Virus record (IMG/VR): IMGVR_UViG_3300017991_000048
Span: 1 to 64,000 of that record
DNA length: 64,000 nt
Direction: 5' to 3' (one strand)
Below the pieces are notes generated by a model, which worked only from the letters and a program-made list of their open reading frames with translations, searched no databases and was not told the DNA's origin. Positions 1,873 through 63,906 of this stretch are shown one piece after another; the stretch's first letter is position 1; each line of letters starts with the position of its first letter. A program made the translations under genes and the position numbers.

Positions 1873-2448
1873 TTATTCCTCGTCCTTCTCTTGTAAATGA
1901 CGCCAGAGATCCCGTTCCGACCCCTTAGGGACCGCTGTCGCAAGCTCAATAATTCCTAAAATCTTCAGCACAACATCTTCTGGCAAGTCCCTGGCTTGTA
2001 TATTGATCTTACCTATGCACTCTTCGCTAACACTAAGCGCAACCCCCTCCGGTATTCGGTCTTTCCGTTTCCAATGTTCAATAGTGTTCTCGGCTGATTG
2101 TATCAGTTGTCGTTTTCGCTCTTCTTCACGACGCATGGCTGTTTCAATATCAACAGACTCGCGGATATGAACAATGACACGTTCGAGTAAAAAGCCGCCG
2201 CCTTTTGTTTCCCTGAAACTTTTATGTTGAGTATTAGAAGATCTTACCACCAGAGTGTGCCGATCACTGCCACCCACGGGCCGAAAAAAAAGGACAACTC
2301 GATCGCGGCCCACATCCAATTGACATTCAACATATGAGCTTTGCGGTTCTTCTCCAACATTTGTCCGAGCACTACACACTCGACTGGTACGCCTCTCGAC
2401 TCCTTTGTAAACATCACCTATGAACTGCTGTATCTGTTTCAGTTCCAT
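1873..2448 (-). CDS. Hypothetical protein with C-terminal LWRHL tag
   Basis: 191-aa ORF ending RDLWRHLQEKDEE; KSFRETKGGGF segment resembles 47090..47502. Confidence 0.75.
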   Translation of the reverse strand: MELKQIQQFIGDVYKGVERRTSRVCSARTNVGEEPQSSYVECQLDVGRDRVVLFFRPVGGSDRHTLVVRSSNTQHKSFRETKGGGFLLERVIVHIRESVDIETAMRREEERKRQLIQSAENTIEHWKRKDRIPEGVALSVSEECIGKINIQARDLPEDVVLKILGIIELATAVPKGSERDLWRHLQEKDEE

Positions 2449-3201
2449 TTACTCGTCACCATCACAATGAGTTGAGTCAAAGTAAGCCTTACGAGCATGG
2501 ACCTGAACAAACTCAGGATCACCATCAGATGTTAAAATCATTGCTGTGAGCCTACCGCCAAACACACACCCAGTGTCGATACCATAACAGCAGCCCTCTT
2601 CAAACTTATCTACACGCGGAGTTAATGAATGCCGAGCATGGCCATAAATAATACTCTCAGGACCACCCCATTTTTCAGCCCAGTAAACCGTGTTCTCAGG
2701 TTGCTTCATTGAACCTCTGGCATAACCAACTTTCTTCCCTTCTTCATCTACATAACGAACTCGTAGAACAGCATCACTTTGCCCGTCCACAGAAAAAGCC
2801 GGTTCCAACCCTCCATGAACAACTACGAAACCACTCTCAAGTTTATAAGTCAGAGGCAGCTTAGACATCCACTCAATCTCTTCTTCCGTCAAGTCCGCAT
2901 TCTGAGCCGCACGTTTGAGAGAAAAGGGCTTCATGGGGTTTTTCTTACCCGTAAGAATTCTCTTAACTTCATGCCTACGCCATCGAACATGCTTTTCCTC
3001 GTGGTTGCCCATTATGACAACAGCCCCTATTTTTCTGGCGTACCGGACACACTCTATCGGATCAGGACCACGATCCATAAGGTCACCGACCTGAACCAAA
3101 CGATCGGATTCTTCGGAAAAAGACAATAAATTCAATAACTCACGGAACTCATCCAAGCACCCGTGAACGTCACCGACTACGATTGTACGCATACGGTACA
3201 T
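2449..3201 (-). CDS. Calcineurin-like metallophosphoesterase (PPP/ApaH-like)
   Basis: GDVHG, GDLMDRG, GNHE, VHGG, HG and IDTGCVFGGRLTA motifs in order. Confidence 0.9.
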   Translation of the reverse strand: MYRMRTIVVGDVHGCLDEFRELLNLLSFSEESDRLVQVGDLMDRGPDPIECVRYARKIGAVVIMGNHEEKHVRWRRHEVKRILTGKKNPMKPFSLKRAAQNADLTEEEIEWMSKLPLTYKLESGFVVVHGGLEPAFSVDGQSDAVLRVRYVDEEGKKVGYARGSMKQPENTVYWAEKWGGPESIIYGHARHSLTPRVDKFEEGCCYGIDTGCVFGGRLTAMILTSDGDPEFVQVHARKAYFDSTHCDGDE

Positions 3202-3232
3202 TACACCGAAGCGAGTTTAAACTCCAGCAAAG

Positions 3233-3910
3233 TTACCGCCAAGCACGACGGCCCGATACTGCCCGTGATGCCTGTGCAGCCTTGAGCGCTCCCTCAAGAG
3301 CCGTTAAGTTCTTGAGAATTTCTTGGTACTCTTCCCCCTTGGCCACAGCATCTTTCACTCTTTGAGGGACCGGCTTGCCTTGGCTTATAGCCCAACTGAC
3401 GCTGTTTGTATGTGCCTTTATGAACGTCTTTGCCGCTACTACATTAATTGGTTGCCTGGACGCATCCATAACTGAAGGGACTTCTCTGTGCCACTGTTCT
3501 ATCATCCGAGTGGCAATGCCTTTTTTCCGATACCCGTCTCGCACCACAATCCATCTGGGTACTTGTTTATAGTTGCCGGGAATTATGTAAGAAGCGATAA
3601 TCCCGTCACCGTCATAAATAAGAACGCCTGCCCTCGTATCTCCTGTAAGAGGAATATGAGGGCACTCACCATGAATAGGTGCAATATCTTTTGCGACCGA
3701 AGTGTCTGATACCCCAAGCTGATAGGTATAAGGAGTGCCTTCAAGAGGGCGCTTCGGCCCCGCAAAAGGCTGTCTTGCCAACGGGCCATCCTGCCCTCTT
3801 GGTATAGGTCTAAAACAACCGAAGAGTTCATTCGGAGTCATTTCCCAACGATAAACAAGCGCCATTATCTCTCTCCTAATCTCTACGGTATAGCTTTTGC
3901 GCGTCTCCAC
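3233..3910 (-). CDS. GNAT-like acetyltransferase-fold protein (start may be 3865)
   Basis: VVRDGYRKKGIATRMI resembles the GNAT acetyl-CoA loop V.p.yRgkGia. Confidence 0.5.
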   Translation of the reverse strand: METRKSYTVEIRREIMALVYRWEMTPNELFGCFRPIPRGQDGPLARQPFAGPKRPLEGTPYTYQLGVSDTSVAKDIAPIHGECPHIPLTGDTRAGVLIYDGDGIIASYIIPGNYKQVPRWIVVRDGYRKKGIATRMIEQWHREVPSVMDASRQPINVVAAKTFIKAHTNSVSWAISQGKPVPQRVKDAVAKGEEYQEILKNLTALEGALKAAQASRAVSGRRAWR

Positions 3911-36884: not shown

Positions 36885-36918
36885 TCTTATCAAGTAAAAC
36901 CGCTATTTCATCAAACTT

Positions 36919-37185: not shown

Positions 37186-37257
37186 TTTTATCAAGTTTTT
37201 AGTGCAATCTTATCAACTTTTTGATAAAACGGTGTACTATTCACCCAGGAGGTTTTT

Positions 37258-51711: not shown

Positions 51712-52194
51712 ATGCCTGTCTGCAAGCACTGCAATTCCAATATCCCCTATGAAGGGGGTGTGATCGTTTCCGGGAAGCTTGAATACTGCTCTTTGACGTG
51801 CTTTGCGGTGCGTGTGTTGGAACCTGACCCCACTGACGCAAATCCTAAAAACGAGCTTCACGGCGGGTGTGTAGTCTGTCAAAAGCTAATTTACAATGTA
51901 GGCCCGGTTCATATCCCTGACCCAGACGACGCCGGTATGTGGTTCTGCCCCGATTGCTGCCCACCCGATGAGATAGTTAAGAAGGTGCGTCTTCAGGACG
52001 GTGATTATTACGTCTGTACTCATTGTGGCATGAGGTATCTTATCTCTACCTTCCCTCTCTGGCTTTCCGCGTTTGATAACGGCGTTTATTGCAGTTTGGC
52101 CTGTAGGCAAGGCTCCAGGAATGGCATCCGGAAGCCGTCGCCTGCCAACCTTTGGGACCATCTAACCTTTGGAGGTTCAAGTGACCATACCTAA
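51712..52194 (+). CDS. Multi-Zn-finger (YCSxxC) protein with LWDHL tag
   Basis: Three CxxC/YCSLxC units; paralog of 62178. Confidence 0.75.
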   Translation: MPVCKHCNSNIPYEGGVIVSGKLEYCSLTCFAVRVLEPDPTDANPKNELHGGCVVCQKLIYNVGPVHIPDPDDAGMWFCPDCCPPDEIVKKVRLQDGDYYVCTHCGMRYLISTFPLWLSAFDNGVYCSLACRQGSRNGIRKPSPANLWDHLTFGGSSDHT

Positions 52195-52713: not shown

Positions 52714-52908
52714 ATGCCAGATCAGTTTGGGTGCCAGTTGTGCGGCGGCAAGGGCATGGCATTCATGCTCCGTATCCCCCTTGATACCGGAGAGACACGG
52801 ACTCTCTTTTTCTGTTCCGATGGATGCCGTGCCAGATTCAGAGCATTACTCCCCACCCCCAAAATCATACACCCCGATCTAAGTCTTTGGGATCACCTCA
52901 GAGAGTAA
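52714..52908 (+). CDS. TRASH-like Zn finger with LWDHL tag
   Basis: CQLCG...FFCSDGC; ends SLWDHLRE. Confidence 0.8.
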   Translation: MPDQFGCQLCGGKGMAFMLRIPLDTGETRTLFFCSDGCRARFRALLPTPKIIHPDLSLWDHLRE

Positions 52909-52910
52909 TA

Positions 52911-53165
52911 ATGAACTGCCTGACCTGTAATGAGCCAATTGGCCATACAATTTACTTCCGAAGGCGGGGCAATCATTCTGACCAGAAGGCCCTGCTTTAC
53001 TTCTGTTCCGGGCATTGCAGGTTCCGTGCCATTACAGAAGGCGGCTTCACCTCGTGTGATGGTTGCCTACGAACCCCTTCTTGTGACCCTCACTGTTCAT
53101 CGGGCCGGGGAACCAACTTCACAATCAAACCCATGACTCTTTGGGATTATCTGAGGCATTCTTAA
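52911..53165 (+). CDS. Zn finger with LWDYL tag
   Basis: CLTC...YFCSGHC; ends TLWDYLRHS. Confidence 0.75.
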   Translation: MNCLTCNEPIGHTIYFRRRGNHSDQKALLYFCSGHCRFRAITEGGFTSCDGCLRTPSCDPHCSSGRGTNFTIKPMTLWDYLRHS

Positions 53166-53218: not shown

Positions 53219-53815
53219 ATGCCCGAACTGATCGTCACAGACTCCGATTTGAGCGACCGGACCAAGGTTGCCCCTTGTACTCTTTACGTGTGCAAAAGTG
53301 ACCGTCCTGCTACCAACGACGGGCTTTACTGGCGCGTAGTGTACACAATTTCGGCATGTGTGGACGATGTTTTGGGGCATTTCCACACGAAAGAGGATGC
53401 GATCAAGTTCGCTGAAGAGCTTTCGGACCCCAGAGAGTTCCTTGGACTCAAAGTTCAGAACGACCATTTTCGGCAAGAGATAGCCGAACGACAGGGGCAA
53501 TTAGAAGCTCTCAAAAACATAGCCGACGCTATGGTCCAGGAACTTAAGAAAAGACGCGCTCCACACCCGGACGATTCTGAAGGGTTTACAACAGCGTCCG
53601 AATTGAGTTTTGAGTTAACGCAGTTGCGTCTCGGAGCCTTTGACCCCGACTTTCCCAGGCTTCTAACTTTTCTTCTGAGGCATTACCAGGGCGCGGAAAG
53701 CCCTCTGGAGTTAAAGTTGCAAGTCGATTCCGTCTGGGACTGGTATCAAATCAAGCAAATCGAGGGCGATCCTAACTCACCTACATTGTGGGACCACCTA
53801 GAAAACAAGGAATAA
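53219..53815 (+). CDS. Helical-domain paralog (module A) with LWDHL tag
   Basis: GLYWRVV module + ELKKRR...KLQVDSVW + TLWDHL. Confidence 0.8.
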   Translation: MPELIVTDSDLSDRTKVAPCTLYVCKSDRPATNDGLYWRVVYTISACVDDVLGHFHTKEDAIKFAEELSDPREFLGLKVQNDHFRQEIAERQGQLEALKNIADAMVQELKKRRAPHPDDSEGFTTASELSFELTQLRLGAFDPDFPRLLTFLLRHYQGAESPLELKLQVDSVWDWYQIKQIEGDPNSPTLWDHLENKE

Positions 53816-53816: not shown

Positions 53817-54065
53817 ATGCCTGACATGCCTGACAGCGAATCCCTCAGAGCCTTGCAAGCCCTGTTATCAGAATATGACAAAGCGAATGATGAGACTCTG
53901 GAAGCTCTCAAAGCCGGGGATATGGCTAAGTATGAAAAACTCGCTCAAGCGAAAATGAAAGCCATAGGCGAGCTTGGCCCTGAAGCCTTAAGAAATGTTA
54001 TGAGGGAGCATCCCGAATTCAGACCCCAAGGTTATGACCCGGACTCGGAGGATCAAAATGCCTGA
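53817..54065 (+). CDS. Small helical protein
   Basis: In operon. Confidence 0.65.
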   Translation: MPDMPDSESLRALQALLSEYDKANDETLEALKAGDMAKYEKLAQAKMKAIGELGPEALRNVMREHPEFRPQGYDPDSEDQNA

Positions 54066-54444
54066 GTACGGACCTTCTGAAACCATTGCGGAGTTAAGAT
54101 TCCGGTGTGGTCAGTATCAGGACAGGCTTGATGACCTCCAAATGAGGCTCAATAACATTGAACGTGTCGGCAAAGATTTGGTCCATGAACTCAAAAGTAG
54201 ACGGCCCCGACACCCAGAAGACTCTGAGGAGTATGAGTTAACAGCCGAACTTATGTTTGAAACGGGCCAGCTTCGTGACGGTGTTTGGGATCTCGACCTT
54301 GAAAAGGTTTTGGAGTACCTCGGAGAACGTTACAGATATACAGAGAACCCTTGGTTGATCAAAAGTCAGGTTGACACTGTTTGGGTAAGGTTCCAAGCCG
54401 AACAAACCAAACATTCCAACCTTTGGGATCATTTGAAGGGGTAG
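54058..54444 (+). CDS. Helical-domain paralog with LWDHL tag
   Basis: Closely similar to C-half of 53219. Confidence 0.8.
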   Translation: MPEYGPSETIAELRFRCGQYQDRLDDLQMRLNNIERVGKDLVHELKSRRPRHPEDSEEYELTAELMFETGQLRDGVWDLDLEKVLEYLGERYRYTENPWLIKSQVDTVWVRFQAEQTKHSNLWDHLKG

Positions 54445-54445: not shown

Positions 54446-54760
54446 ATGGACTGGGTATCTCAATACTGGGTTGGCTTTTGTGTGGCGGGTTATATCTGCC
54501 TTTTGGTCCTTTATTTTCGCACCCTTTACCACTACTACAAGATGAGAGATCTTTACTCCCATGTCCAGGTTGAGAACTCAAAACTACTCAATCGTAACCT
54601 TGAACTACTTGAGCGCAACCATCAGCTTGACCGTCAAAATACCTATCTGGAGCGTCAAAATAGCTCGATGCTCAGAGCCCAACCAACCAAGACAAAAGCT
54701 CGAAAACCGAAACCACCACCGGACGACCCTAAAAGCCTTTGGGATCATGTGAAGGACTAG
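54446..54760 (+). CDS. Membrane-anchored coiled-coil protein with LWDHV tag
   Basis: N-terminal TM YWVGFCVAGYICLLVLYF, heptads, Pro linker, SLWDHVKD. Confidence 0.8.
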   Translation: MDWVSQYWVGFCVAGYICLLVLYFRTLYHYYKMRDLYSHVQVENSKLLNRNLELLERNHQLDRQNTYLERQNSSMLRAQPTKTKARKPKPPPDDPKSLWDHVKD

Positions 54761-54775: not shown

Positions 54776-55042
54776 ATGAAATTAGATGCACCTAAAACCG
54801 TAAAGTTCGCCGGTATCGAGAGAAAAGTCAAAGTACACAGGGGCTTTGCCCGTCTCAGACCTGGGATTGACGTGATAGTGCTCACAAGCGGCAGGTACTA
54901 CGCCATGGAGAGGCACCAGACCGACTCTGCCTTTACGGGCACAGGCGATACCTTCCAGGAAGCTGTATCCAACCTGGAAGCCAATGCACTATCCAAGTTC
55001 AAGGCTTTGGGCAAGATGCTAAATTATGATGTGGAGAAATGA
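54776..55042 (+). CDS. P.T.KF.G.ERKV family protein
   Basis: GDTFQEAVSNLE...LG..LNYDVE. Confidence 0.75.
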   Translation: MKLDAPKTVKFAGIERKVKVHRGFARLRPGIDVIVLTSGRYYAMERHQTDSAFTGTGDTFQEAVSNLEANALSKFKALGKMLNYDVEK

Positions 55043-55326
55043 CCAAAATCATACTCACAAGCGAAAGCACACCTGTCATTGACCGGGAAGGCGAGACCCC
55101 TCCTGGCACTTTGATTGTGTGCAAGACCAATAACCCGGATTCTATCAAGCGGGGGTTATATTGGCGTGTGGTACAGGTGCATTCCCAGATGGGTGTTGAC
55201 CTTCAGGGACGCTTTGCCACCAAAACGTCTGCCATAGCTTATACGGATAAAATGACAAACGGATCACCTATGACTGTTGTCCCTGAAACCACCAAAACCC
55301 TTTGGGACCATCTGCGATGCCAATAA
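55039..55326 (+). CDS. Module A alone with LWDHL tag
   Basis: TPPGTLIVCKTNNP...RGLYWRVV; ends TLWDHLRCQ. Confidence 0.8.
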   Translation: MTKIILTSESTPVIDREGETPPGTLIVCKTNNPDSIKRGLYWRVVQVHSQMGVDLQGRFATKTSAIAYTDKMTNGSPMTVVPETTKTLWDHLRCQ

Positions 55327-55928
55327 GAAGAATTGACACACCGGAACAGCTACTAGAAGAAATCAGTCGCTTTTTCCGATCAAACGCCTCGGTAAGCAGG
55401 GTTGACGCTGCTTACACCTTGCGGCAACTGGCCAAGCGTATCAACCCGCCTGACGTCAACTCTTCTGAACCCCTTGACCCCAAACCTGAAGCAGTCCCAA
55501 TTGACGGCCTCAATAGAATCCACGGTATGGTCAAAGACCAAACAAAATCCATTAGAGAGCTACGCAACGCTCTTTTCCGAAGAAACAAAGAGGATCTAAA
55601 GACAAGCGACACGGGAAAGGCTTTGATCCGTGAAATGCGTGATCGTAGGGCCAGATATCCAAATGAGCCAACTCTTTACGAAACACCCCTCAGAGAGCTA
55701 CTTCAATACGAACTTGACTGTCTTCTGAAGGGCGCTTGGCATACGAAAAAAGACACCCTGGCTTATATCAAGCTAAACTATAACGTTACCGCCGACTTCA
55801 AAGAGGCGGTTGACTTCAAAAAGAACATCGATGCTCTCTGGGATCAGTTTGAAACCGAATGGATTGAAGACCATGGCGGCAAATCCACCCTTTGGGACCA
55901 TTTAGAAAAGGACGCCACAAATGACTGA
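55317..55928 (+). CDS. Leader-module plus helical-domain paralog with LWDHL tag
   Basis: RIDTPEQLLEEI...SR..AAYTLRQLAKRI resembles MEKIANPQELA leader; KKNIDALW; STLWDHL. Confidence 0.8.
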   Translation: MPIRRIDTPEQLLEEISRFFRSNASVSRVDAAYTLRQLAKRINPPDVNSSEPLDPKPEAVPIDGLNRIHGMVKDQTKSIRELRNALFRRNKEDLKTSDTGKALIREMRDRRARYPNEPTLYETPLRELLQYELDCLLKGAWHTKKDTLAYIKLNYNVTADFKEAVDFKKNIDALWDQFETEWIEDHGGKSTLWDHLEKDATND

Positions 55929-56330
55929 ACTGGCAGACATCGGTGGTATCTTTGCCCTTCTAGCTCTCTGGCATTTCATTGCTGACTGGCTGTTCCAATC
56001 TCACTATACGGCGGTCAATAAGTCTGCCAGACCCTTGATCCGGGCGTGGCACTCATTCGCCTATGCGGTGTACTTCTTTCCCCTCGTGTTCTTTGTTCCC
56101 ATTCTAACCGGAACCCTGCTACTCTTGTGGCTTTTCAGTTCCCATTACTTCATCGATTCTTACTACCCTCTCTACTGGTGGGCCAAGTACCAACGGAAGA
56201 TGCCAGAACCTAACAATCCCAGACAACTTGAGGCTTGGGTAGCCTCACCGTCAACCCTGTTCTGTTTATTACGGTTGACCAAATTTTTCACCTCATCTGC
56301 CTCTTACCTTTGGCGTGGCTCGTAAGATGA
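55921..56330 (+). CDS. DUF3307-like membrane protein, 1-nt deletion near 56258
   Basis: HFIADWLFQS, HSFAY, SHYFIDSY; DQIFH motif appears in the shifted frame. Confidence 0.75.
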
Positions 56331-56572
56331 ACACCTATATCTTCCCCTCAGACACCCGTGTACTGGTCGTTATGGCTGAAACGATAGAAGTGGCCGTTTC
56401 CATATTACAGCCGACGCAGTTGGAAATAAATAAGGTCGTGGTCCTATCTGACAGTAATACCACTGTGGAGATTTCATGGACCGATAAAAAGGCTCATATG
56501 GTCAAAAGGACCGGACCGCAGGAGCAGATCCGGGTTTTATGGGATCACCTGAAAAGTGATAATGAGGATTAG
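56327..56572 (+). CDS. Small protein with LWDHL tag
   Basis: Ends VLWDHLKSDNED. Confidence 0.75.
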   Translation: MNTYIFPSDTRVLVVMAETIEVAVSILQPTQLEINKVVVLSDSNTTVEISWTDKKAHMVKRTGPQEQIRVLWDHLKSDNED

Positions 56573-56573
56573 T

Positions 56574-56804: not shown

Positions 56805-57540
56805 ATGGCCAAACTCGTAGTCACAGACGAACCCTCAGTTGTAATTGACCGGGAAGGGCTCACCCCAACGGGTACTCTGATTGTATGTAGAACCAATAAC
56901 CCCAATGCCTTCGACAGAGGGTTGTATTGGCGTGTGGTCAAAGTGGCAAAAACCGGAGTTGACGATATAGGCCAGTTCGCCACCAAACAGTCTGCATTGG
57001 ATTATGCTGAAAAGGTGGTGGAACCAGAAGTAATTAGGATTTTTGGGATCGAATTTACCCCTAGCGATGATATTGAGGCGGATGACAATGTTTATACTTC
57101 TGATCTTGTTCTTTGGGATTGGGTCGAGGTTTACTATCAACGATTGGGTGATGCGTTCCAGGTAGGCATCCGAACGGGCCTTAGAGGTTTGGGGCTGGCT
57201 GGCACTGGCCCTCATTTGAAGGCGGCTGTGCATGACTTGGAACGGCACATTGAGGGTATCCTGAATCTCTGCCTGCAACTCGTCAATACCAAGCCTGAGA
57301 AGTTTAATGAGACGCAAGTTTATCTCGAACGGATAGTCAAGCTTAGGGCCACGGTTCAAGAACAAATAGAGACGGAACAAAAATGGGAGTTTGAAGTATA
57401 TTGGCGACATCTATCGTGACGCCTATCCGAAAGGCTGCGATACGGCGTACCAGTATAAGCAAGACATTGATGCCGTTTGGGAACGTATCCAGCGCGATTA
57501 TGACCAGGGCGGCTCAACTCTTTGGGACCATTTAAAGTGA
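56805..57540 (+). CDS. Modules A+B plus helical tail with LWDHL tag, frameshift near 57392
   Basis: ORF 56805..57419 continues out of frame LKYIGDIY...KQDIDAVW...STLWDHLK*. Confidence 0.7.
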
Positions 57541-57923
57541 TTCAAACGATTAAAACACACCCCAAGACCTGTCCCATCACCAACGTGATCCACACGTCTG
57601 GAAACTTGGAGCAAATTTTCATTCATAATGAGCAGTACAGCGCCCTTTGTGAGACTCATTACCGGCTCGGACTCAAGCCGGTAGACTTTATGAAAACCGT
57701 TTTCGGACGTCAGACCTATTGCATGACCACTTTTCGCCGGTACTGGGTCTGGGAATTTGATACACACCGTGTCTATGCCAATAACCAAAAGGGCATAGTC
57801 TTTGAAGTCCCTCTCAATTCCAAGGGACGCAAGCCCCAACTTAAGCAAGCTCTTCAGGCATGGTGTGGGTTTTATCGCACCGTCGTTAGAACCGGACGAA
57901 AGATTGAGAAGCGACATGGCTAA
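57537..57923 (+). CDS. Hypothetical protein
   Basis: GTGA overlap with upstream stop. Confidence 0.65.
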   Translation: MIQTIKTHPKTCPITNVIHTSGNLEQIFIHNEQYSALCETHYRLGLKPVDFMKTVFGRQTYCMTTFRRYWVWEFDTHRVYANNQKGIVFEVPLNSKGRKPQLKQALQAWCGFYRTVVRTGRKIEKRHG

Positions 57924-58452
57924 GACTTTTACAGAGTTTGCATCTTACACTCTGGGCTCGCACCCGACCGCTGTTTGTGCCCGTTGCGACAAGAGATACC
58001 ACGAGGAACCCCGTCGTCTTTGCCCTCATTGTGAACAGGAGTATTCTCAGAGGTATCGCCCCTACTTCTCTGAAGGCCATATACGGCAAATTCTGAACCT
58101 CGAACACCAAATCACTGAGTATAAGGAACTCGTTACTCGTTATGAAAACCTCTGTCTGGAAGCGACTAACGCCTTGCGGTTCCGTCGCATCAGAACCGGA
58201 CCCGAACATAGCAATTCATACCACGCCTTAGATCACGAGGTGCGTCTGTTGACAGGGGGTAGGGACTGGAAGCCTTCCACAGTATTCACAAATCAAGTCG
58301 TCAGAGGCTACTATGAAAAAGCCGAAACCGCTGATGAGAGCTTTAACCTCAAGAAACATCTTGATGCCATTTGGGAAGAGGCACATTCTAACAAGTGGTT
58401 CTCATCCGTCAAAAGCTTTTGGGATCATTTAAAGGGAGCAAAGAATGGCTAG
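57916..58452 (+). CDS. Zn-ribbon helical-domain paralog with FWDHL tag
   Basis: CARC..CPHC; LRFRR; KKHLDAIW. Confidence 0.8.
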   Translation: MAKTFTEFASYTLGSHPTAVCARCDKRYHEEPRRLCPHCEQEYSQRYRPYFSEGHIRQILNLEHQITEYKELVTRYENLCLEATNALRFRRIRTGPEHSNSYHALDHEVRLLTGGRDWKPSTVFTNQVVRGYYEKAETADESFNLKKHLDAIWEEAHSNKWFSSVKSFWDHLKGAKNG

Positions 58453-58969
58453 AACGGACCCGGAATGGTCAAACTCACGATCCCGGCGTTATGAAACCGT
58501 GCTTGCCGTTTGCTCTATATGTCGCAGAGAGTATCACAAACACTACTATCCCAAGGGCTGCCCCGACTGCACTGATCCTGTTTATCCTTACGCTTTTCCC
58601 CCGGTAGAGCCAGACGTACTAAAAATGGTCCAGATGCGTGGAGAACTTAATCGTTGTCACCAACAGATGACCCGGTATGAGGAACTTTGTCAGGAAGCTA
58701 CCGATTCTTTACGCCGTCGCCGTGTTTTGGAGGGAGAAAAACACAAAGATACCTGCCAAGCCTTGCTTGATGAGTTGCGTATCCTTGACGATGATGACTG
58801 GACCCCGACCACGGGATTTGTATACCGTGTCGTCGCACGATACTACGACAGAGCCAGCACCCCCAAGGAAGGCTTCCATTTGAGAAAACAGCTTGAGGGT
58901 ATTTACGAAAATGCCCGTGATAAGTGGGTATTGTCTGTCAAAAACTTCTGGGACCATTTGAGAAAATGA
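58445..58969 (+). CDS. Zn-ribbon helical-domain paralog with FWDHL tag
   Basis: Close paralog of 57916. Confidence 0.8.
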   Translation: MARTDPEWSNSRSRRYETVLAVCSICRREYHKHYYPKGCPDCTDPVYPYAFPPVEPDVLKMVQMRGELNRCHQQMTRYEELCQEATDSLRRRRVLEGEKHKDTCQALLDELRILDDDDWTPTTGFVYRVVARYYDRASTPKEGFHLRKQLEGIYENARDKWVLSVKNFWDHLRK

Positions 58970-59439
58970 CCGATAAGGATACAGAAAATAGACTCAGGCG
59001 TATCTGTCAGGAAATGGGGCACCCGAACCGGGAAGTTGCCAACCGGGAAGAAACGGAAGCTTTGCTTCGTACTATTGATTCACTCCGCAAGGACGAGTGT
59101 CCGTGTTGCAAAGACGGGGAACAGTTAGAATCTTATAAAGCCGTCTGCTGGTCGGCAATCACAGCTTTACAACAGAACCGCACCGGTCGAAAGCCCTTCC
59201 CCACGAACCACGCTGAATCCGTAAGAGAACTATATAATGAGATCGAACAGATGAGGCATCCCGATTGGGAGCCCCACCATACATATGTAAATGAAGTCGT
59301 TACCTCGTACTTTGAGGGAGCTACAACCTACGAGGAAGCTATTGAGCGTAAGAAGTTTCTAGATCGCATCTGGAATCAACAGCTTCAAAGCCATTGGACT
59401 TCTGATTACACCCTTTGGAGCGCCCTTAAAGATGGCTAG
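58966..59439 (+). CDS. Helical-domain paralog with LWSAL tag variant
   Basis: DWEP, KKFLDRIW, TLWSALKDG. Confidence 0.8.
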   Translation: MTDKDTENRLRRICQEMGHPNREVANREETEALLRTIDSLRKDECPCCKDGEQLESYKAVCWSAITALQQNRTGRKPFPTNHAESVRELYNEIEQMRHPDWEPHHTYVNEVVTSYFEGATTYEEAIERKKFLDRIWNQQLQSHWTSDYTLWSALKDG

Positions 59440-59444: not shown

Positions 59445-60071
59445 ATGCTGATAATCTCAGATTCTGATACGATAAGCCTGCACCCGGTTATAACCCCAAC
59501 GGGCACCATAATTGTATGCAGGACCACTGATCGTGATATTGCTCAGAACGATAAGGGCTGGAGAGTAGTCCGGGTAAACGAGTTTGAAAACCTTGCTCAG
59601 TTAGGTCGGTACAGTACAAAAGAAGAGGCGGTAGAAGTCGGATTGGAGATAACTCGCAACCTAGTCCACACCACCGAGTCGGCCCGAATTGATGAACTTG
59701 AACGCAGGCTATCAGATCGTGATACCCGGCTTGACGCGCTCAATAAACACATAGCTAATTGGGAACGGACTGCCCAGGAACTCGTTAAGAGAATAAGGTC
59801 AAAAAGACAGGTCGTTTTTAGTGATGACCCTCCCCCCGTAAGACGGTCGCAACTCGATGAATTGCAGCGAGAGTGTGAGATCCTGGAAGAGGGCCACGCC
59901 TGGGAACCAATATTCTCTCAGATTACAGATTGGGTGTATAAAGCGTATTGTCAGAACTCATCGGAAGCGTATAGGTACAAGATATTACTCGACAGTATAT
60001 GGGATCAGTACCAAGAAGAATTAGCTAAACGCGGCGAGATATCGACTCTCTGGGATCATTTGAATGATTAG
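59445..60071 (+). CDS. Module A plus helical-domain paralog with LWDHL tag
   Basis: TPTGTIIVCRT..WRVV; KILLDSIW; STLWDHLND. Confidence 0.8.
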   Translation: MLIISDSDTISLHPVITPTGTIIVCRTTDRDIAQNDKGWRVVRVNEFENLAQLGRYSTKEEAVEVGLEITRNLVHTTESARIDELERRLSDRDTRLDALNKHIANWERTAQELVKRIRSKRQVVFSDDPPPVRRSQLDELQRECEILEEGHAWEPIFSQITDWVYKAYCQNSSEAYRYKILLDSIWDQYQEELAKRGEISTLWDHLND

Positions 60072-60729
60072 ACCCGAAAGTGTTAAGATCTTTGATGTTG
60101 AGTTCTCCAAGGAGGAGGGCTCCACACTCTATACTTCTGACTCTTTCGACGGGTGGGTCGAGGTTTGGGAAGTGCAGTATAAGATCGAGGTCAGTCTCCG
60201 CATCGAGAAACGTATCATCGGGTCTTCTGGGGATACCTTGGAAGAAGCGATCGAGAGCCTCGAAAACTTGGTAGAAAGGATTTGGGCTGGACTTCACAAG
60301 GTCGTCACCTCCAAATGGGGCTCTTCCAAACCTTATTTAGGTCGGATAGCCGAACTCGAAGGGAAAGTTAAATCACTTGAGGCTATGCTTTCGGGGTATC
60401 AAAGACGTGATACCGAGTGGCAAACTCTTGCCGACGATCTTTACAAGGCCATGCGAGCCAGGAGACAAGTAGTACCCGCTGACAATCGTGTGATATCAGA
60501 GTTTATCGAGCTTTTACGCAGAGAGTATGAGATTCTGTTAGACGGTGCCGCTTGGCAGCCGACTTTTACTCAGATTCAAGGGCAACTTGAGAACATCTAC
60601 CAATGTGACCCCGCGAGTGCCCCTGAACGTAAACGAGCGATAGACAGTGTTTGGGAGCTTGCTCAATTAAAGCTCGCTCTCGCTGGCTACCGCACAACCC
60701 TTTGGGAGCACTTGAACGGTGATAGTTGA
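60064..60729 (+). CDS. Module B plus helical-domain paralog with LWEHL tag
   Basis: VKIFDVEF..YTSD..WVEV, GDTLEEAIESLE; KRAIDSVW. Confidence 0.8.
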   Translation: MIRPESVKIFDVEFSKEEGSTLYTSDSFDGWVEVWEVQYKIEVSLRIEKRIIGSSGDTLEEAIESLENLVERIWAGLHKVVTSKWGSSKPYLGRIAELEGKVKSLEAMLSGYQRRDTEWQTLADDLYKAMRARRQVVPADNRVISEFIELLRREYEILLDGAAWQPTFTQIQGQLENIYQCDPASAPERKRAIDSVWELAQLKLALAGYRTTLWEHLNGDS

Positions 60730-60931
60730 TTGCTCATACGATGAAATCAACTACTGGTTTTACACGGTCTGGTTCCAGGAAAAACGGAGAGTGGTTCTCG
60801 GATACTGTGAGAACACAGACGGGAAGCATCCCATGGTTTATGTGGATGAAGAGTGGCTGGAACCAAGGGGCTGGATAGCCAGAACATTCGTCAACTGTAT
60901 TGGACGATACCTGAAGTGGGCACAATGCTAG
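60719..60931 (+). CDS. Small hypothetical protein
   Basis: Overlapping operon arrangement. Confidence 0.55.
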   Translation: MIVDCSYDEINYWFYTVWFQEKRRVVLGYCENTDGKHPMVYVDEEWLEPRGWIARTFVNCIGRYLKWAQC

Positions 60932-61305
60932 TTAGTATGGAGGATTTGATTATGAAAACCAAAAATGAGTCAGAACAAGATATCTTAAAGAGGAAGTACG
61001 GCAAGGTGTATGACCAGCTAATTAAAATGACAACTTTACTCCGATCCAGACGGGGCGAAAGGGAGTACGCCCCTGGCAACACTCCGTCAAATATCATTCA
61101 TAACACAATCGAGTGGGAGATAGATCAACTCAGAGGTGCCCCTAAAATTCCAGAGCTATTGAAATGGATAGAACAGTATTACAACTCACTCGATACTACT
61201 CAAGAGTTGATCGCCTTCAAACGGTTGCTTGACCGTCAGTGGGAAGAGCAATTGACAGAGAGCATGGGTAGCTCCAAGATTCTTTGGGATCATCTCACGG
61301 AGTAG
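60925..61305 (+). CDS. Helical-domain paralog with LWDHL tag
   Basis: LRSRR; KRLLDRQW; ILWDHLTE. Confidence 0.8.
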   Translation: MLVSMEDLIMKTKNESEQDILKRKYGKVYDQLIKMTTLLRSRRGEREYAPGNTPSNIIHNTIEWEIDQLRGAPKIPELLKWIEQYYNSLDTTQELIAFKRLLDRQWEEQLTESMGSSKILWDHLTE

Positions 61306-61311: not shown

Positions 61312-61815
61312 ATGCGACTGTTAGTTTTTGACGAAAAGTGTAGGTGTTCAAAAGGTTTTTTGATCCCTGTCAATACAGGCTTGCCTCAGCCATGCGATTG
61401 TCTTTCTGAGGCTGAATTTGACAAAGTAAAAGGCAAGCTGGAGCTTTGCGTCCAGTCGAGTTCCCCGTGGCGTGTTCTTGAATATCAGACCAAAGCTTTG
61501 GAAGATCAGCTTCGTACAATGCGTAACCAGCTTCGCAAGATTGTTAGGTTGCTTAGATTCAGGCGGGGTGTAGTTGACGCTGACTTTGATAAGGCGAGCA
61601 CTGATAGTTTGGCGCGGACTGAAATCCATGAGTTAGAACAGACTCCTGGATTTGCGGAAATACTAACGTCGTTGAATCGGTGTTATAAGAATGCCACGAC
61701 TGAAGATTTGACCCGGTATAAGCGCACCCTCGATGATCTTTGGGAAAAGTGGACAATAACACGCGGCTCTAAAGACCCAAAGGCACTATGGGACCATCTG
61801 CTCGACAACTCTTAG
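61312..61815 (+). CDS. Cys-motif helical-domain paralog with LWDHL tag
   Basis: CRC.KG...PCDC; LRFRR; KRTLDDLW. Confidence 0.8.
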   Translation: MRLLVFDEKCRCSKGFLIPVNTGLPQPCDCLSEAEFDKVKGKLELCVQSSSPWRVLEYQTKALEDQLRTMRNQLRKIVRLLRFRRGVVDADFDKASTDSLARTEIHELEQTPGFAEILTSLNRCYKNATTEDLTRYKRTLDDLWEKWTITRGSKDPKALWDHLLDNS

Positions 61816-62099
61816 GAATTTTTCAAGTGATCCCATAGTGTTATAATCTTGTCGCCGCACTCATCCTTGGCTATTATCATGTCACGAGAGCCGCCGACCG
61901 GGACACTTCCCCAGTGCGGCCAAGCGTGTTTGACTTCTCCCCCATATTTCATGCACAAATGGGGTGGTTTAGGCGACGGCATAGCCTTCTGTTCTGCTTC
62001 TGTCGGCTTCAGGTGTGGGCAGTCTGGTTTACATAATTTCGCCATGTTAGGCTCTGGGAAAGGCCATTTTAGGGGTAGAGGCGGGTAATGATACGCCAT
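61812..62099 (-). CDS. Cys/His-rich protein with LWDHL tag
   Basis: Paralog of 35389; GGTGTAATA box upstream. Confidence 0.8.
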   Translation of the reverse strand: MAYHYPPLPLKWPFPEPNMAKLCKPDCPHLKPTEAEQKAMPSPKPPHLCMKYGGEVKHAWPHWGSVPVGGSRDMIIAKDECGDKIITLWDHLKNS

Positions 62100-62177: not shown

Positions 62178-62678
62178 ATGCCCCAATGTAGACAATGCCG
62201 CTGTGTTTACACCCACAAGGGTGTGACTTTTCTCGGACCAAATAGTAACATTCATTGGTGCTCATGGGTCTGTTATAACCTAGCCAGAGCCAACGCCGTC
62301 ACCGAAAAGTGTGACGAATGCGGTAAGCATCTTCATAAGGGGCCTGCTTACATTTGCGAGACTCTCACAGGTGGTAATTACTTCCGGTGTGAGGCGTGTT
62401 ATTCAGTTGCCGATCCAAACGAAATCCCGGAAGTCAAATGTTTTCGCGATCGAATGGTTCATGTGCGAATTAATGACAATGAGATGTTTTTCCGTTGCGA
62501 TTCGTGCAACGGTTACGCCCCTCTTGAACGCCCTGTTTACTTTAGTCTCTACAACCATGGAACCTATTGTAGCCCTGTCTGTAGTCACAATAGTCATGGC
62601 AAACAAGACCCTGAATCCGACAAGGATCTTTGGGGCCACCTAACAAAGGAGCCTGAACAATGTCAGAAGAAGAGTTAG
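62178..62678 (+). CDS. Multi-Zn-finger protein with LWGHL tag
   Basis: Paralog of 51712; WCSWVC, YCSPVC. Confidence 0.75.
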   Translation: MPQCRQCRCVYTHKGVTFLGPNSNIHWCSWVCYNLARANAVTEKCDECGKHLHKGPAYICETLTGGNYFRCEACYSVADPNEIPEVKCFRDRMVHVRINDNEMFFRCDSCNGYAPLERPVYFSLYNHGTYCSPVCSHNSHGKQDPESDKDLWGHLTKEPEQCQKKS

Positions 62679-63084: not shown

Positions 63085-63088
63085 CTGT

Positions 63089-63667
63089 ATGCCGTCAAAA
63101 AAGACCAAAGTAATAGTTCAAAAGACAGGTTCGACAAGCATTGGCTTTGGCAGCGCCCTGACCCTTATACTCATCACACTCAAGCTGACGGGCCACATTG
63201 ACTGGTCTTGGATTTGGGTTCTGTTTCCGTTTTGGCTCCCTGTAGCAGCCATGATCGGTCTGGCGTTAGGGGCCATTCTGATGGTTGCCCTGTTCGGTAC
63301 TGGCTTCATGGTGGTTGAGTTCTTCACAGAGCGACATGCCAAGAAAAAGCAAGACTCGCATGAACGATTGCATAGACAATTGCATGAGCAAAGACTAGAA
63401 ACCGAGAGGACGGCTCGACAACGGCACCAACGTTCACACGAGCGAAGGCTAGAGTACCCTTTACTCCGTGAAAGGGTACGAGGATTGAGAGCGGCACATG
63501 ATCTAGCCTTGTCTTTTTCTGGCGTTGAAGCTGATCTTGAAGCTGAGGAACAAAGGCTTGAGGCTGAGATACAAGAGCTTGAATCTCGTCTACAGGAAAA
63601 GAGTGACCCGCCAGAGGACAAACCGACAGAACCCGAACAGACTTTATGGGATCACCTGAAGGATTAA
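63089..63667 (+). CDS. Membrane protein with coiled coil and LWDHL tag
   Basis: LITLKLTGHIDWSWIWVLFPFW TM hairpin, coiled coil, TLWDHLKD. Confidence 0.8.
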   Translation: MPSKKTKVIVQKTGSTSIGFGSALTLILITLKLTGHIDWSWIWVLFPFWLPVAAMIGLALGAILMVALFGTGFMVVEFFTERHAKKKQDSHERLHRQLHEQRLETERTARQRHQRSHERRLEYPLLRERVRGLRAAHDLALSFSGVEADLEAEEQRLEAEIQELESRLQEKSDPPEDKPTEPEQTLWDHLKD

Positions 63668-63669
63668 TC

Positions 63670-63906
63670 ATGCCCAACCCAATACTTGTACTGTCGCCAG
63701 AACCCGATTGTGCCTTATGCGAGGGCCAAGGGGTTCTTACCGATTCAGATTCAAAACTTCGCACAGAAGACGGAACCGATCTTGAAGTTACATACGTCTG
63801 CGAGTGTGTAAGCAGTGTGGATCTTTGGGAGTTACTGACAGATCGTATCAAAGACGGAACCGCTACTCGGAATCTTTTTGACCACCTGATACACGGAGAT
63901 GGCTAA
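63670..63906 (+). CDS. Zn-finger protein with LFDHL tag variant
   Basis: CALCEGQG...CEC; DLWELL and NLFDHL. Confidence 0.75.
   Translation: MPNPILVLSPEPDCALCEGQGVLTDSDSKLRTEDGTDLEVTYVCECVSSVDLWELLTDRIKDGTATRNLFDHLIHGDG

What the first reader, a model, noticed from the sequence alone, without database searches (positions are those of the whole stretch)
1873..63906. A shared C-terminal peptide tag (S/T/N/D)-L-W-D-H-L on about 37 unrelated proteins
Seen: 33 proteins end in [LVF]W[DEGR][HY][LVI] 1-12 residues from the stop: 2448, 22568, 22870, 27610, 28355, 28628, 28824, 32900, 36201, 36919, 48554, 48914, 49761, 50059, 51712, 52714, 52911, 53219, 54058, 54446, 55039, 55317, 56327, 56805, 57916, 58445, 59445, 60064, 60925, 61312, 62099, 62178, 63089. 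Four variants end LWSVI, LWAVL, LWSAL and LFDHL. The tag occurs on both strands and on Zn fingers, helical domains, HicB-like folds and membrane proteins, usually after a Pro/Lys/Glu/Thr linker. All six Leu codons, GAC/GAT and CAC/CAT are used, so selection is on the peptide. Established: short C-terminal motifs dock proteins on hubs (T4-type sliding-clamp-binding tails, SSB tail, ssrA degron, encapsulin cargo peptides). Inference: a library of adaptors (variable target-binding head plus common docking tail) feeding one hub such as a protease, chaperone, clamp, compartment or import machinery, conceptually like F-box adaptors. I know no description of this motif.
Basis: partly seen in the sequence, partly recalled or inferred. 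Interest (0 to 1): 0.92.

Follow-up and report, generated by a model that had tools for sequence, protein, structure and literature searches.

The report
Shared end-tag on huge-phage proteins
About 38 small, mostly unrelated proteins in this stretch of a 398-kb "huge" bacteriophage end in the same short peptide (Thr-Leu-Trp-Asp-His-Leu plus a few charged residues); the tag recurs in related huge phages, looks like an undescribed address or docking label, and its receptor is still unknown.

Summary
The window is the first 64 kb of a 398-kb huge-phage contig. It holds 33 ORFs ending in [LVF]W[DEGR][HY][LVI] within 12 residues of the stop, against 0.085 expected, plus five variants.

Selection acts on the peptide, not the DNA:
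- every copy is in frame;
- wobble positions vary at background codon usage;
- nothing is conserved beyond codons -1 to +6;
- a 56%-GC relative encodes the same peptide with different codons.

The tag zone runs from about 22 kb to about 87 kb of the contig, with roughly 60 tags. A second huge phage (416 kb) carries at least 35 tags on largely non-homologous proteins. One small conserved family keeps the tag in all 19 small divergent homologues found, although its linker varies. Related huge-phage DNA (752 kb) has 3 such hits.

The consensus is [KR]-[TSDN]-L-W-D-H-L-[KR]-[DE]. AlphaFold models it as a short helix after a loop or a low-confidence linker. It occurs on zinc ribbons, helical proteins and two membrane proteins, and occasionally internally or near the N-terminus.

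Best reading: a portable docking or address peptide for one conserved, probably phage-encoded, receptor. The receptor and the purpose (sorting, adaptor or degron) are not established. I found no description of this motif.

The parts
1873..2448 (-). tagged ORF, 191 aa, tail DLWRHLQEKDEE*. The orthologue in a 411-kb relative ends GLWDHLQEEEF*.
22335..22568 (-). tagged ORF, 77 aa, 'FVDE' mini-domain family, tail KTLWEHIEEDDG*
22568..22870 (-). tagged ORF, 100 aa, 'FVDE' family paralogue, tail MTLWDYIQEEG*. The AF2 model shows a 3-stranded mini-sheet, a low-confidence linker and a tag helix.
27610..27951 (+). tagged ORF, 113 aa, Cys-rich, tail SLWDHVKDE*. A 54%-identical orthologue in phage 2 ends DFWDHVKTED*.
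28355..28606 (+). tagged ORF, 83 aa, tail DLWDHLSES*
28628..28849 (+). tagged ORF, 73 aa, Zn-ribbon-like, tail NLWEHLSEDSNGKKTQNK*
28824..29321 (+). tagged ORF, 165 aa, tail DLWGHLTNDEE*
32894..33091 (+). tagged ORF, 65 aa, tail CKRCFRDLWDHLIKE*. It has homologues in phage 2 with the same tail.
35389..35637 (-). tagged ORF, 82 aa, variant tail TLWSVIRET*
36201..36884 (+). tagged ORF, 227 aa, tail DLWDHLSEA*. One tagged protein of alignment A1 gave a weak GNAT hit; this ORF is the likely source.
36919..37185 (+). tagged ORF, 88 aa, tail TLWDHLSERT*
48246..48554 (-). tagged ORF, 102 aa, FCS-like Zn ribbon, tail TLWDHLREG*
48991..49212 (+). tagged ORF, 73 aa (the start may be 48914), tail TVWDHLTDQD*
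49761..50054 (+). tagged ORF, 97 aa, tail NLWDHVR*
50367..50534 (+). start-less ORF fragment with tail TLWDHVKEP*. It is a family A fragment, probably frameshifted relative to 50059-50454.
50535..50939 (+). tagged ORF, 134 aa, family A, variant tail SLWAVLKDLP*
51712..52194 (+). tagged ORF, 160 aa, four CxxC, FCS-like Zn ribbons, tail NLWDHLTFGGSSDHT*
52714..52908 (+). tagged ORF, 64 aa, FCS-like Zn ribbon, tail SLWDHLRE*
52911..53165 (+). tagged ORF, 84 aa, FCS-like Zn ribbon, tail TLWDYLRHS*
53219..53815 (+). tagged ORF, 198 aa, family A, tail TLWDHLENKE*
54034..54444 (+). tagged ORF, 136 aa, family A, tail NLWDHLKG*
54446..54760 (+). tagged ORF, 104 aa: N-terminal transmembrane helix, coiled coil, Pro/Lys linker, tail SLWDHVKD*
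55039..55326 (+). tagged ORF, 95 aa. It has only the N-terminal domain of the 53219/59445 group, joined directly to the tag TLWDHLRCQ*.
55317..55928 (+). tagged ORF, 203 aa, family A, tail TLWDHLEKDATND*
56327..56572 (+). tagged ORF, 81 aa, tail VLWDHLKSDNED*
56805..57419 (+). ORF, 204 aa, with variant tail VYWRHLS*
57391..57540 (+). tagged ORF, 49 aa, family A C-terminal fragment, tail TLWDHLK*
57916..58452 (+). tagged ORF, 178 aa, Zn ribbon plus family A domain, tail SFWDHLKGAKNG*
58445..58969 (+). tagged ORF, 174 aa, Zn ribbon plus family A domain, tail NFWDHLRK*
58966..59439 (+). tagged ORF, 157 aa, family A, variant tail TLWSALKDG*
59445..60071 (+). tagged ORF, 208 aa, family A, tail TLWDHLND*
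60064..60729 (+). tagged ORF, 221 aa, family A, tail TLWEHLNGDS*
60925..61305 (+). tagged ORF, 126 aa, family A core. The AF2 model is all-helical and the tag is a separate short helix at residues 120-125.
61312..61815 (+). tagged ORF, 167 aa, family A, tail ALWDHLLDNS*
61812..62099 (-). tagged ORF, 95 aa, tail TLWDHLKNS*. A 45%-identical orthologue in phage 2 ends TLWDHLMEN*.
62178..62678 (+). tagged ORF, 166 aa, four CxxC, FCS-like Zn ribbons, tail DLWGHLTKEPEQCQKKS*
63089..63667 (+). tagged ORF, 192 aa: 2-3 transmembrane helices, long coiled coil, acidic/Pro linker, tail TLWDHLKD*
63646..63906 (+). ORF, 86 aa, variant tail NLFDHLIHGDG*

Best explanation
The motif is a portable short linear peptide with consensus [KR]-[TSDN]-L-W-[DE]-[HY]-[LVI]-[KRQST]-[DE]. 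It lies 1-12 residues from the C-terminus. It serves as a common docking or address tag for a large, fast-evolving set of small accessory proteins in a sub-clade of huge (about 400-kb) phages.

Shown:
- Selection acts on the peptide.
- The tag sits behind variable, Pro/Glu/Lys/Thr-rich linkers on about 20 unrelated head types.
- It is constant across non-homologous repertoires in divergent phages.
- It was present in every small homologue of one conserved family that was recovered.

Inferred:
- The residue before Leu1 (T/S/D/N in 33 of 36 copies) caps a one- to two-turn helix that presents Leu1, Trp2 and Leu5 on one face.
- That face inserts into a hydrophobic groove of one conserved receptor, and the acidic tail adds charge contacts.
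- The flexible linker lets any head be tethered.

Because two phages of different G+C content (48% and 56%) keep the identical tag, and no relative of the conserved tagged family occurs in 185,579 species genomes, the receptor is most likely phage-encoded.

I commit to recruitment or co-localisation as the most likely purpose. That means bringing the accessory proteome, including two membrane-anchored members, to one phage-built site or assembly such as a replication or assembly compartment, a scaffold, or the virion interior. I rate destruction of the tagged proteins as less likely. The receptor is unidentified.
For: - Enrichment: 33 C-terminal hits against 0.085 expected, 1 internal.
- Controls: 752 kb of related huge-phage DNA has 3 C-terminal and 5 internal hits. 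In 913 kb of unrelated viral loci chosen because they contain the DNA probe, there are 2 C-terminal and 73 internal hits.
- Peptide-level selection: all copies are in frame. Wobble positions are at background usage. Information content is periodic by codon and confined to codons -1 to +6. The 38 window tags use 35 distinct 15-nt sequences. Phage 2 encodes the tag mainly with CTC/GAC/CAC where phage 1 uses CTT, GAT/GAC and CAT/CAC.
- Extent: the tags continue to about 87 kb of the contig, and there are none from 87 to 97 kb.
- Portability: phage 2 (IMGVR_UViG_3300028840_002431 / 3300017963_000197) has 24 C-terminal tags in 10 kb and at least 35 in all, yet few of its tagged proteins hit phage 1 proteins. 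A third lineage (L152) has 4 C-terminal tags and one internal copy in 14 kb. The 95-aa protein at 55039-55326 lacks the family A C-terminal domain but keeps the tag.
- Conservation: in the FVDE family T, L and W are invariant while the linker varies in length and sequence. All 19 small representatives, from clusters at 50% identity, carry the tag.
- Structure: AF2 gives the tag as a separate short helix after a loop (family A, pLDDT 74) or after a low-confidence linker (FVDE).
- Position -1 is T/S/D/N in 33 of 36 copies, and the post-tag residues are 31% D+E.
- Two tagged proteins have transmembrane segments.
- No FVDE relative was found in genome contigs.
Against: - No receptor was found, and no binding, localisation or stability data exist.
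- Nothing distinguishes recruitment from degradation or adaptor roles.
- The timing of expression is unknown; sigma-70-like promoters are not enriched.
- The phage-encoded-receptor argument is indirect, because a universally conserved host protein would also explain a constant tag.
- About a third of the tags sit on one paralogous family, where the motif could partly be a family feature.
- The AF2 confidence at the tag is only 55-73.
- A close relative (411 kb, 59% identical rIIA-like protein) has just one tag in about 50 kb examined, including an array of small genes, so the system is not essential to the wider clade.
Confidence: 0.5

Rival explanations
1. Degron or timer. The tag is recognised by a host or phage protease or unfoldase, so that this whole class of accessory (possibly early) proteins is cleared at a set time. 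A variant is that the tagged proteins are adaptors that deliver their bound host targets to that protease.
For: The architecture of head, flexible linker and short terminal peptide matches known protease-tethering tails and degrons (established knowledge: the SspB C-terminal ClpX-binding peptide, ssrA). Nearness to a chain end suits initiation of unfolding. Membrane proteins can also carry degrons. A shared signal on about 60 small genes in one 65-kb block fits class-wide control.
Against: The distance to the free C-terminus varies from 1 to 12 residues, and the last residues are charged. Known C-terminal degrons of ClpXP or Tsp type need a defined non-polar end. Some copies are internal or N-terminal. 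No protease or AAA+ unfoldase was seen in about 135 kb of this phage examined. The only HExxH protein found (L155:6423-7037) is a core gene of at least 42 huge-phage contigs, most of which show no tags nearby.
Confidence: 0.22
2. Processing site. The motif is a cleavage or modification site for a phage maturation protease or modifying enzyme. For example, a short C-terminal stub might be removed, or fused domains separated.
For: L-W-[D/E] loosely resembles the L/I-x-E sites of T4-type prohead proteases (from memory). A few internal copies lie between two small domains. A highly conserved HExxH protein lies two to three genes from the conserved tagged FVDE gene in phages 1, 2 and 6.
Against: Removing 1-12 charged residues has no obvious purpose. 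Asp, not Glu, dominates at the third position. The HExxH gene is much more widespread than the tag. His and the final Leu are also conserved, which suits a binding helix better than a scissile site.
Confidence: 0.07
3. Family signature. The tagged genes all descend from one ancestral gene, and the motif is merely the conserved end of that fold.
For: 12-13 window proteins, and about 20 in the contig, belong to one helical family in which the tag follows the last helix.
Against: Heads-only BLAST gives 22 clusters. The heads include Zn ribbons, a beta mini-domain, helical domains and membrane proteins. The linkers are unrelated. One protein retains only the N-terminal domain plus the tag. Phage 2's tagged proteins are mostly non-homologous to phage 1's.
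Confidence: 0.05
4. Nucleic-acid element. The conserved sequence is a DNA or RNA signal at gene ends, such as a promoter, a ribosome-binding helper for the next gene, a terminator or a recombination site, and the peptide is a by-product.
For: Most tags lie 10-40 nt upstream of the next gene. TGGGA is purine-rich. The first Leu prefers CTY in both phages, about 70% against about 44% background.
Against: All tags are in one reading frame relative to a long ORF, whereas the distance to the stop varies only in whole codons. Wobble positions are free and nothing flanking is conserved. Substitutions are conservative at the amino-acid level (L/V/I/F, D/E, H/Y). Tags occur at convergent gene ends, internally and N-terminally. 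The same peptide is encoded with shifted codons at 56% G+C.
Confidence: 0.02

Closest known systems
Pyrenoid Rubisco-binding motif of Chlamydomonas, [D/N]W[R/K]xx[L/I/V/A] (bioRxiv 10.1101/2020.08.16.252858)
   Same: Both are short Trp/Leu motifs at the C-termini of several otherwise unrelated proteins, including membrane proteins. Both also have internal copies followed by acidic residues. [quoted passage not shown]
   Different: The consensus differs: Asp/Glu-His follows Trp here, against Arg/Lys there, and Leu precedes Trp here. The organism is a phage of bacteria, not an alga. The receptor and any compartment are unknown here, and the scale (about 60 proteins per genome) is much larger.
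Encapsulin cargo-loading peptides and bacterial microcompartment encapsulation peptides
   Same: Both have a cargo domain, a flexible linker and a short terminal peptide that docks on the inside of a protein shell. Encapsulin shells are related to phage capsids (from established knowledge).
   Different: The consensus is different (GSL-type, or an amphipathic helix of about 18 residues). Cargo genes lie next to the shell gene, and only a few cargos exist per system. No shell gene was linked to the tag here.
Terminal hub-binding tails: the SSB C-terminal tip, T4/RB69 clamp-binding tails, bacterial beta-clamp motif QL[SD]LF, and the SspB ClpX-binding tail
   Same: All are short hydrophobic/acidic peptides at the end of a flexible tail that dock many different proteins on one hub.
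   Different: None has the L-W-D-H-L consensus. Those systems have a handful to a few dozen clients of known replication or proteolysis function. Here the clients are ORFans with no known domains.
T4 capsid targeting sequence and phage-nucleus import in chimalliviruses
   Same: Both are phage systems that sort selected proteins to a phage-built structure.
   Different: The T4 signal is N-terminal, is removed by the prohead protease and is used by few proteins (from memory). Chimallivirus cargo is recognised through surface residues of the folded protein, not a terminal signal sequence (PMC12908238).
LC3/Atg8-interacting (LIR/AIM) motif [W/F/Y]xx[L/I/V] with acidic neighbours
   Same: W-D-H-L fits the core pattern, and several LIRs are C-terminal.
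   Different: That is a eukaryotic autophagy system. This element carries bacterial-phage hallmarks, namely a sigma-70 region 4 protein, an rIIA-like protein and tail-fibre-like proteins. The resemblance is of pattern only.

Membership tests
Encapsulin cargo-loading peptide | C-terminal peptide with a GSL-type consensus on cargo encoded next to an encapsulin shell gene | tested here: not met
   The consensus is [TSDN]LWDHL. No encapsulin or shell family hit was found in the window proteins scanned.
Bacterial beta-clamp-binding motif / T4-type clamp-binding tail | QL[SD]LF-like pentapeptide, or a hydrophobic-acidic tail of replication or late-transcription proteins that binds a sliding clamp | tested here: not met
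   No Gln-Leu-x-Leu-Phe pattern is present. The carriers are ORFans, not replication proteins. Binding itself cannot be tested here.
SSB C-terminal tip | Acidic tail ending in D-D-D-I-P-F-COOH on an OB-fold ssDNA-binding protein | tested here: not met
   Tails end in varied charged residues. A few relatives end in EEF or SDF, but none is an SSB.
ssrA/ClpXP-type C-terminal degron | Non-polar residues at the extreme C-terminus with the free carboxylate at a fixed position | tested here: not met
   The motif lies 1-12 residues from the end and is followed by K/R/D/E-rich residues. Degradation itself cannot be tested here.
Sortase/exosortase-type C-terminal sorting signals | Motif followed by a transmembrane helix and a basic tail | tested here: not met
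   Only 1-12 polar residues follow the motif.
Pyrenoid Rubisco-binding motif | [D/N]W[R/K]xx[L/I/V/A] that binds Rubisco | tested here: not met
   The position after Trp is D/E in 30 of 36 copies, not R/K. No Rubisco context exists.
T4 capsid targeting sequence | N-terminal peptide of about 10 residues removed by the prohead protease | tested here: not met
   The tag is C-terminal in about 90% of cases. Cleavage cannot be tested here.
F-box / PRANC adaptor proteins | A folded domain of about 40-50 residues that binds Skp1 of an SCF ubiquitin ligase | tested here: not met
   The conserved element is 7-9 residues. No F-box or PRANC Pfam hit was found among the 36 tagged proteins.
LIR/AIM (Atg8-binding) motif | [W/F/Y]xx[L/I/V] that binds Atg8/LC3 of a eukaryotic host | tested here: inconclusive
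   The core pattern is met (W-D-H-L). However, the element has bacterial-phage hallmarks, and no Atg8-like partner can be examined.
Generic short linear docking motif (SLiM) | A peptide of 3-10 residues in a disordered or flexible region, conserved while its flanks vary, arising on unrelated proteins | tested here: met
   Binding to a partner was not tested.

The most novel reading that the evidence does not exclude
The tag is a proteome-scale address signal, the phage counterpart of a nuclear-localisation or cargo-loading signal. A single phage-encoded receptor reads it to sort about 60 or more fast-evolving accessory proteins per genome into a phage-built destination. That destination could be a compartment or condensate in the infected cell, or the capsid interior for co-injection with the DNA. 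Any newly acquired gene would gain entry simply by acquiring the nine-residue tail.
Probability: 0.3. Interest if true: 0.92.

Novelty: new variant of a known kind. Interest (0 to 1): 0.82.

Why it matters
Huge phages carry hundreds of small genes of unknown function. A shared, transferable end-tag would group about 60 of them per genome into one functional class. It also gives a direct experimental handle: one peptide, one receptor to fish for. If the receptor sorts proteins to a compartment or into the virion, this would be the first simple linear sorting signal described for a bacteriophage, and a ready-made tag for directing foreign proteins to that destination. If the receptor is a protease or a host hub, it would reveal a phage-wide strategy for timed turnover or for hijacking that hub. 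In either case the motif is a practical annotation marker for this sub-clade of huge phages.

Tried and rejected
- Near-identity search of 25 kb against GenBank phages found no match. tblastn with the rIIA-like protein found only distant relatives at 34% identity or less.
- Pfam and PHROGs scans of all 36 tagged proteins gave only marginal single hits.
- Word-indexed protein searches with one tagged protein and with a profile of 32 tagged proteins returned only self hits.
- Alignment-based locus searches failed twice for lack of a conserved 7-10-column stretch.
- A single-protein locus search with the sigma-like protein found only itself.
- An exact 15-mer DNA probe found only chance hits outside the contig. 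Degenerate probes with at least 14 fixed bases then worked.
- One contig look-up failed because the start codon was guessed wrongly.
- Foldseek of the family A model against the PDB found nothing significant.
- Profile searches of the three conserved neighbours of the FVDE gene against PDB sequences found nothing. Pfam and PHROGs also found nothing for them.
- The HExxH neighbour was considered as the receptor or protease and down-weighted. It is a core gene of at least 42 huge-phage contigs, while tags lie near it only in phages 1 and 2.
- Gene neighbourhoods of FVDE genes in other lineages are not conserved.
- The sigma-70 promoter scan of 46-64 kb showed no enrichment, so expression timing could not be inferred.
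- Literature searches for LWDHL or WDHL and for jumbo-phage C-terminal targeting motifs found nothing relevant.
- The host was not identified. The source metagenome also yielded a Planctomycetes bin of similar G+C (PMC7449369), which is no more than a coincidence worth checking.

Full report
**What the window is.** The window is positions 1-64000 of IMGVR_UViG_3300017991_000048 (JGI Ga0180434_10000003), a 398,071-bp viral contig. It has 48% G+C. Its recognisable genes are those of a tailed phage of bacteria:
- an rIIA-like protein at 465-1793(-), matching PHROG 6077 with distant tblastn hits in Pseudomonas, Vibrio and enterobacterial phages;
- tail-fibre or head-decoration-like proteins at 3883-5652 and 11375-12727;
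- a metallophosphatase, a nucleotide-sugar epimerase and a pyruvyl transferase;
- a sigma-70 region 4 protein at 38118-39308, next to a Myb-like protein;
- a J-domain protein at 44647-44940(-).

No close relative exists among GenBank phages.

**Check of the observation.** A six-frame scan finds 33 ORFs of at least 45 codons with [LVF]W[DEGR][HY][LVI] at most 12 residues before the stop, and only one internal match.
- Shuffling residues within each ORF 1000 times gives a mean of 0.085 C-terminal matches and a maximum of 2.
- With the variants LWSVI, LWAVL, LWSAL, LFDHL and YWRHL, and a start-less fragment at 50367-50534, the window has 38 tagged ORF ends.
- In 752 kb of DNA from 39 loci of related huge-phage contigs there are 3 C-terminal and 5 internal matches.
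- In 913 kb of unrelated viral loci that were fetched because they contain the DNA probe, there are 2 C-terminal and 73 internal matches.

So chance copies are internal about 97% of the time, whereas the window's copies are terminal 97% of the time.

**Peptide or nucleic acid?** Four results point to the peptide.
- Of the 28 TGGGAYCAY sites in the window, 25 are tags. Each lies in the frame that reads W-D-H inside an ORF, and the distance to the stop varies only in whole codons.
- Codon choice at Asp, His and the last Leu equals the background of the same genes. Only the first Leu is skewed, with CTT at 52% against 25%.
- Per-nucleotide information content is high at codon positions 1 and 2 and low at position 3. 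It falls to background outside codons -1 to +6.
- The 38 tags use 35 different 15-nt sequences.

A DNA or RNA element is therefore excluded for practical purposes.

**Anatomy of the tag.** The consensus is [KR]-[TSDN]-L-W-[DE]-[HY]-[LVI]-[KRQST]-[DE].
- Position -1 is T, S, D or N (classic helix N-cap residues) in 33 of 36 copies.
- The residues after the motif are 31% Asp+Glu and 20% Lys+Arg.
- The 15 residues before it are enriched in Pro, Lys and Glu.
- AlphaFold2 models of two unrelated families both put the tag in its own short helix. In helical family A (pLDDT 74) it spans residues 120-125, after a five-residue loop.
- In the small FVDE family, a three-stranded sheet (pLDDT about 80) is followed by a low-confidence linker and then a helix at residues 92-98.
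- In a helix, Leu1, Trp2 and Leu5 fall on one face. That step is inference.

**Who carries the tag.** None of the 36 tagged proteins has a convincing Pfam or PHROG assignment. Heads-only BLAST gives 22 clusters.
- An HMM unites 12-13 window proteins, and about 20 in the contig, into one helical family, here called family A. Foldseek finds no PDB analogue for it.
- Five proteins are zinc ribbons with a C-x2-C ... [FY]-C-S-x2-C pattern.
- Two proteins (54446-54760 and 63089-63667) have N-terminal transmembrane helices followed by a coiled coil, a linker and the tag.
- The protein at 55039-55326 keeps only the N-terminal domain of its relatives, joined directly to the tag.

**Extent in this phage.** Walking along the contig shows tags continuing to about 87 kb, with about 25 more C-terminal copies. 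There are none between 87 and 97 kb.
- The tag zone is therefore roughly 22-87 kb. It consists mostly of same-strand arrays of small genes.
- Outliers are 1873-2448 and a third FVDE copy near 387 kb.
- In the 64-87 kb part a few copies are not C-terminal. An 80-residue zinc-ribbon protein has one copy at residues 7-11 and a variant at its C-terminus. Others lie between two small domains.

A free C-terminus is thus preferred but not required.

**Relatives.** Degenerate DNA probes on IMG/VR found the same tag in a second huge phage, represented by two contigs: IMGVR_UViG_3300028840_002431 (416.5 kb) and IMGVR_UViG_3300017963_000197 (173 kb). It has 56% G+C.
- It has 24 C-terminal tags between 161.2 and 171.3 kb and at least 35 in all.
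- Only a handful of its tagged proteins resemble those of the window, at 29-54% identity. Its codons are shifted (CTC/GAC/CAC) but the peptide is the same.
- One of its sub-families carries the relaxed form P-L-T-L-W-[RGA]-[AC]-[LI], which marks T-L-W-x-x-L as the core.
- A 14.8-kb contig of a further lineage has four C-terminal tags and one internal copy.

The small FVDE family (22335-22568 and 22568-22870 in the window) supplies the cleanest evolutionary evidence.
- In 12 aligned members T, L and W are invariant, while the Pro-rich linker varies in length and sequence.
- A profile search of 1.84 billion representative proteins found 19 small members, and every one carries the tag near its end.
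- No relative was found in one genome for each of 185,579 bacterial and archaeal species.

A closer relative of the window's phage (IMGVR_UViG_3300033489_000001, 411 kb, rIIA-like protein 59% identical, syntenic) has only one tag in about 50 kb examined. It sits on the orthologue of 1873-2448. An array of small genes there lacks the tag. The tagged repertoire has therefore expanded in a sub-clade.

**Search for the receptor.** I found none.
- The FVDE gene near 387 kb lies beside three conserved genes without family assignments.
- One of them (L155:6423-7037, 204 aa) has an invariant H-E-M-T-H motif, that is HExxH. It is 57-76% identical in the three other phages aligned with it (phage 2, phage 3 and the contig of L150).
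- However, it is a core gene of at least 42 huge-phage contigs, and tags occur beside it only in phages 1 and 2. It is therefore not specifically linked to the tag.
- In the N2-centred loci compared, genes with a match only in phage 2 include a phosphatidylserine decarboxylase (83% identity). A helical protein of about 100 residues (77% identity to phage 2) has one further, weaker match.
- These are leads, not evidence.

**Interpretation.** The following are shown:
- a peptide-level, terminal, portable motif;
- flexible or low-confidence linkers before it;
- constancy across non-homologous repertoires and across divergent phages.

It is inferred that the motif is a docking helix for one conserved receptor, probably phage-encoded. 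I rank recruitment or sorting to a common site first. Reasons are the very large and diverse client set, the membrane-anchored members, and the analogy with the pyrenoid Rubisco-binding motif, which has a similar character and position. A class-wide degron or protease-adaptor role comes second, and a processing site third. Family signature and nucleic-acid element readings are essentially excluded.

Known phage sorting systems differ from this one. Chimallivirus nuclear import uses surface residues rather than a terminal signal (PMC12908238). The T4 capsid targeting sequence is N-terminal and cleaved (from memory).

**Novelty.** Full-text searches for the motif and for comparable jumbo-phage targeting motifs found nothing. 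Shared terminal docking peptides are a known kind of device. This consensus, its proteome-wide scale in a phage and its unknown receptor make it a new variant of that kind. It could be more if the receptor defines a new sorting pathway.

Noticed in passing
window 28603-62175, e.g. 36881-36893, 37182-37194, 39362-39871 (7 copies), 47847-48182: An extended palindrome ACTTGAT-(A/T)3-ATCAAGT (core TTGATNNNATCAA) occurs 28 times against 2.6 expected. All copies are intergenic, often in clusters, and several overlap the TGA stop of tagged genes. It is probably an operator or promoter element that co-regulates this region, or possibly a weak hairpin terminator.
   Followed up: partly
window 44647-44940 (-): A 97-residue protein consisting of little more than a J domain (Pfam DnaJ, E = 3e-9). 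This is a phage-encoded co-chaperone that could recruit host DnaK.
   Followed up: partly
window 50059-50534: Two overlapping ORFs (50059-50454 and the start-less 50367-50534) both match the family A profile. This is a frameshifted pseudogene or a programmed frameshift within the tagged family.
   Followed up: partly
L139:6570-6812 (contig about 80.7-81.0 kb): An 80-residue FCS-type zinc-ribbon protein carries the motif twice: NKNLWQHL at residues 5-12 and SALWDCLRE* at the C-terminus. L138:17397-17999(-) has the motif between a zinc ribbon and a second domain.
   Followed up: partly
L155:6423-7037 (-) (contig about 390 kb); L156-L197: A 204-residue protein with invariant HEMTH (HExxH, a putative small metalloprotease) has no Pfam, PHROG or PDB match. 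It is a core gene, 45-76% identical, of at least 42 huge-phage contigs of 80-450 kb, and so is a useful marker for this clade.
   Followed up: partly
L155:15424-16503 (-) (contig about 381-382 kb): A phosphatidylserine decarboxylase (Pfam E = 2e-40) is 83% identical between the two tag-rich phages and had no match in the other N2-centred loci compared. This suggests phage-driven membrane-lipid remodelling.
   Followed up: no
window 22335-22870; alignment A7; P0022, P0025: The FVDE mini-domain (F-V-D-E-x-G-x-L-C-x-K-x-x-D-G-x-V-x-Y-V-V-L-S-T) resembles, from memory, the beta-hairpin 'foldon' trimerisation unit of T4 fibritin. It is followed by a conserved P-P-x-Y. The same unit matches 12-16 times in giant proteins of 2934 and 5174 residues.
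   Followed up: partly
window tags; L141, L148: The first Leu of the tag prefers CTY in both phages: CTT in 17 of 33 copies at 48% G+C and CTC in 20 of 35 at 56% G+C. All other degenerate positions follow background usage. This is unexplained; it may be a codon-pair or translation effect before TGG.
   Followed up: partly
L138:16472-17134 (-), L140:13797-14096, L140:16089-16562: Genes unusual for a phage lie just beyond the window: a thaumatin-domain protein, an RRM_1 RNA-binding protein and a PTH2-type peptidyl-tRNA hydrolase.
   Followed up: no
window 48246-48554, 51712-52194, 52714-53165, 62178-62678: Several tagged proteins share a C-x2-C ... [FY]-C-S-x2-C zinc-ribbon pattern (FCS/TRASH-like). 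It is sometimes duplicated within one protein.
   Followed up: no
window 37258-39308: A Myb-like DNA-binding protein lies directly upstream of a 396-residue protein with sigma-70 region 4 and further HTH domains. Just downstream is the densest cluster of the palindrome. These are candidate regulators of the tagged gene block.
   Followed up: no
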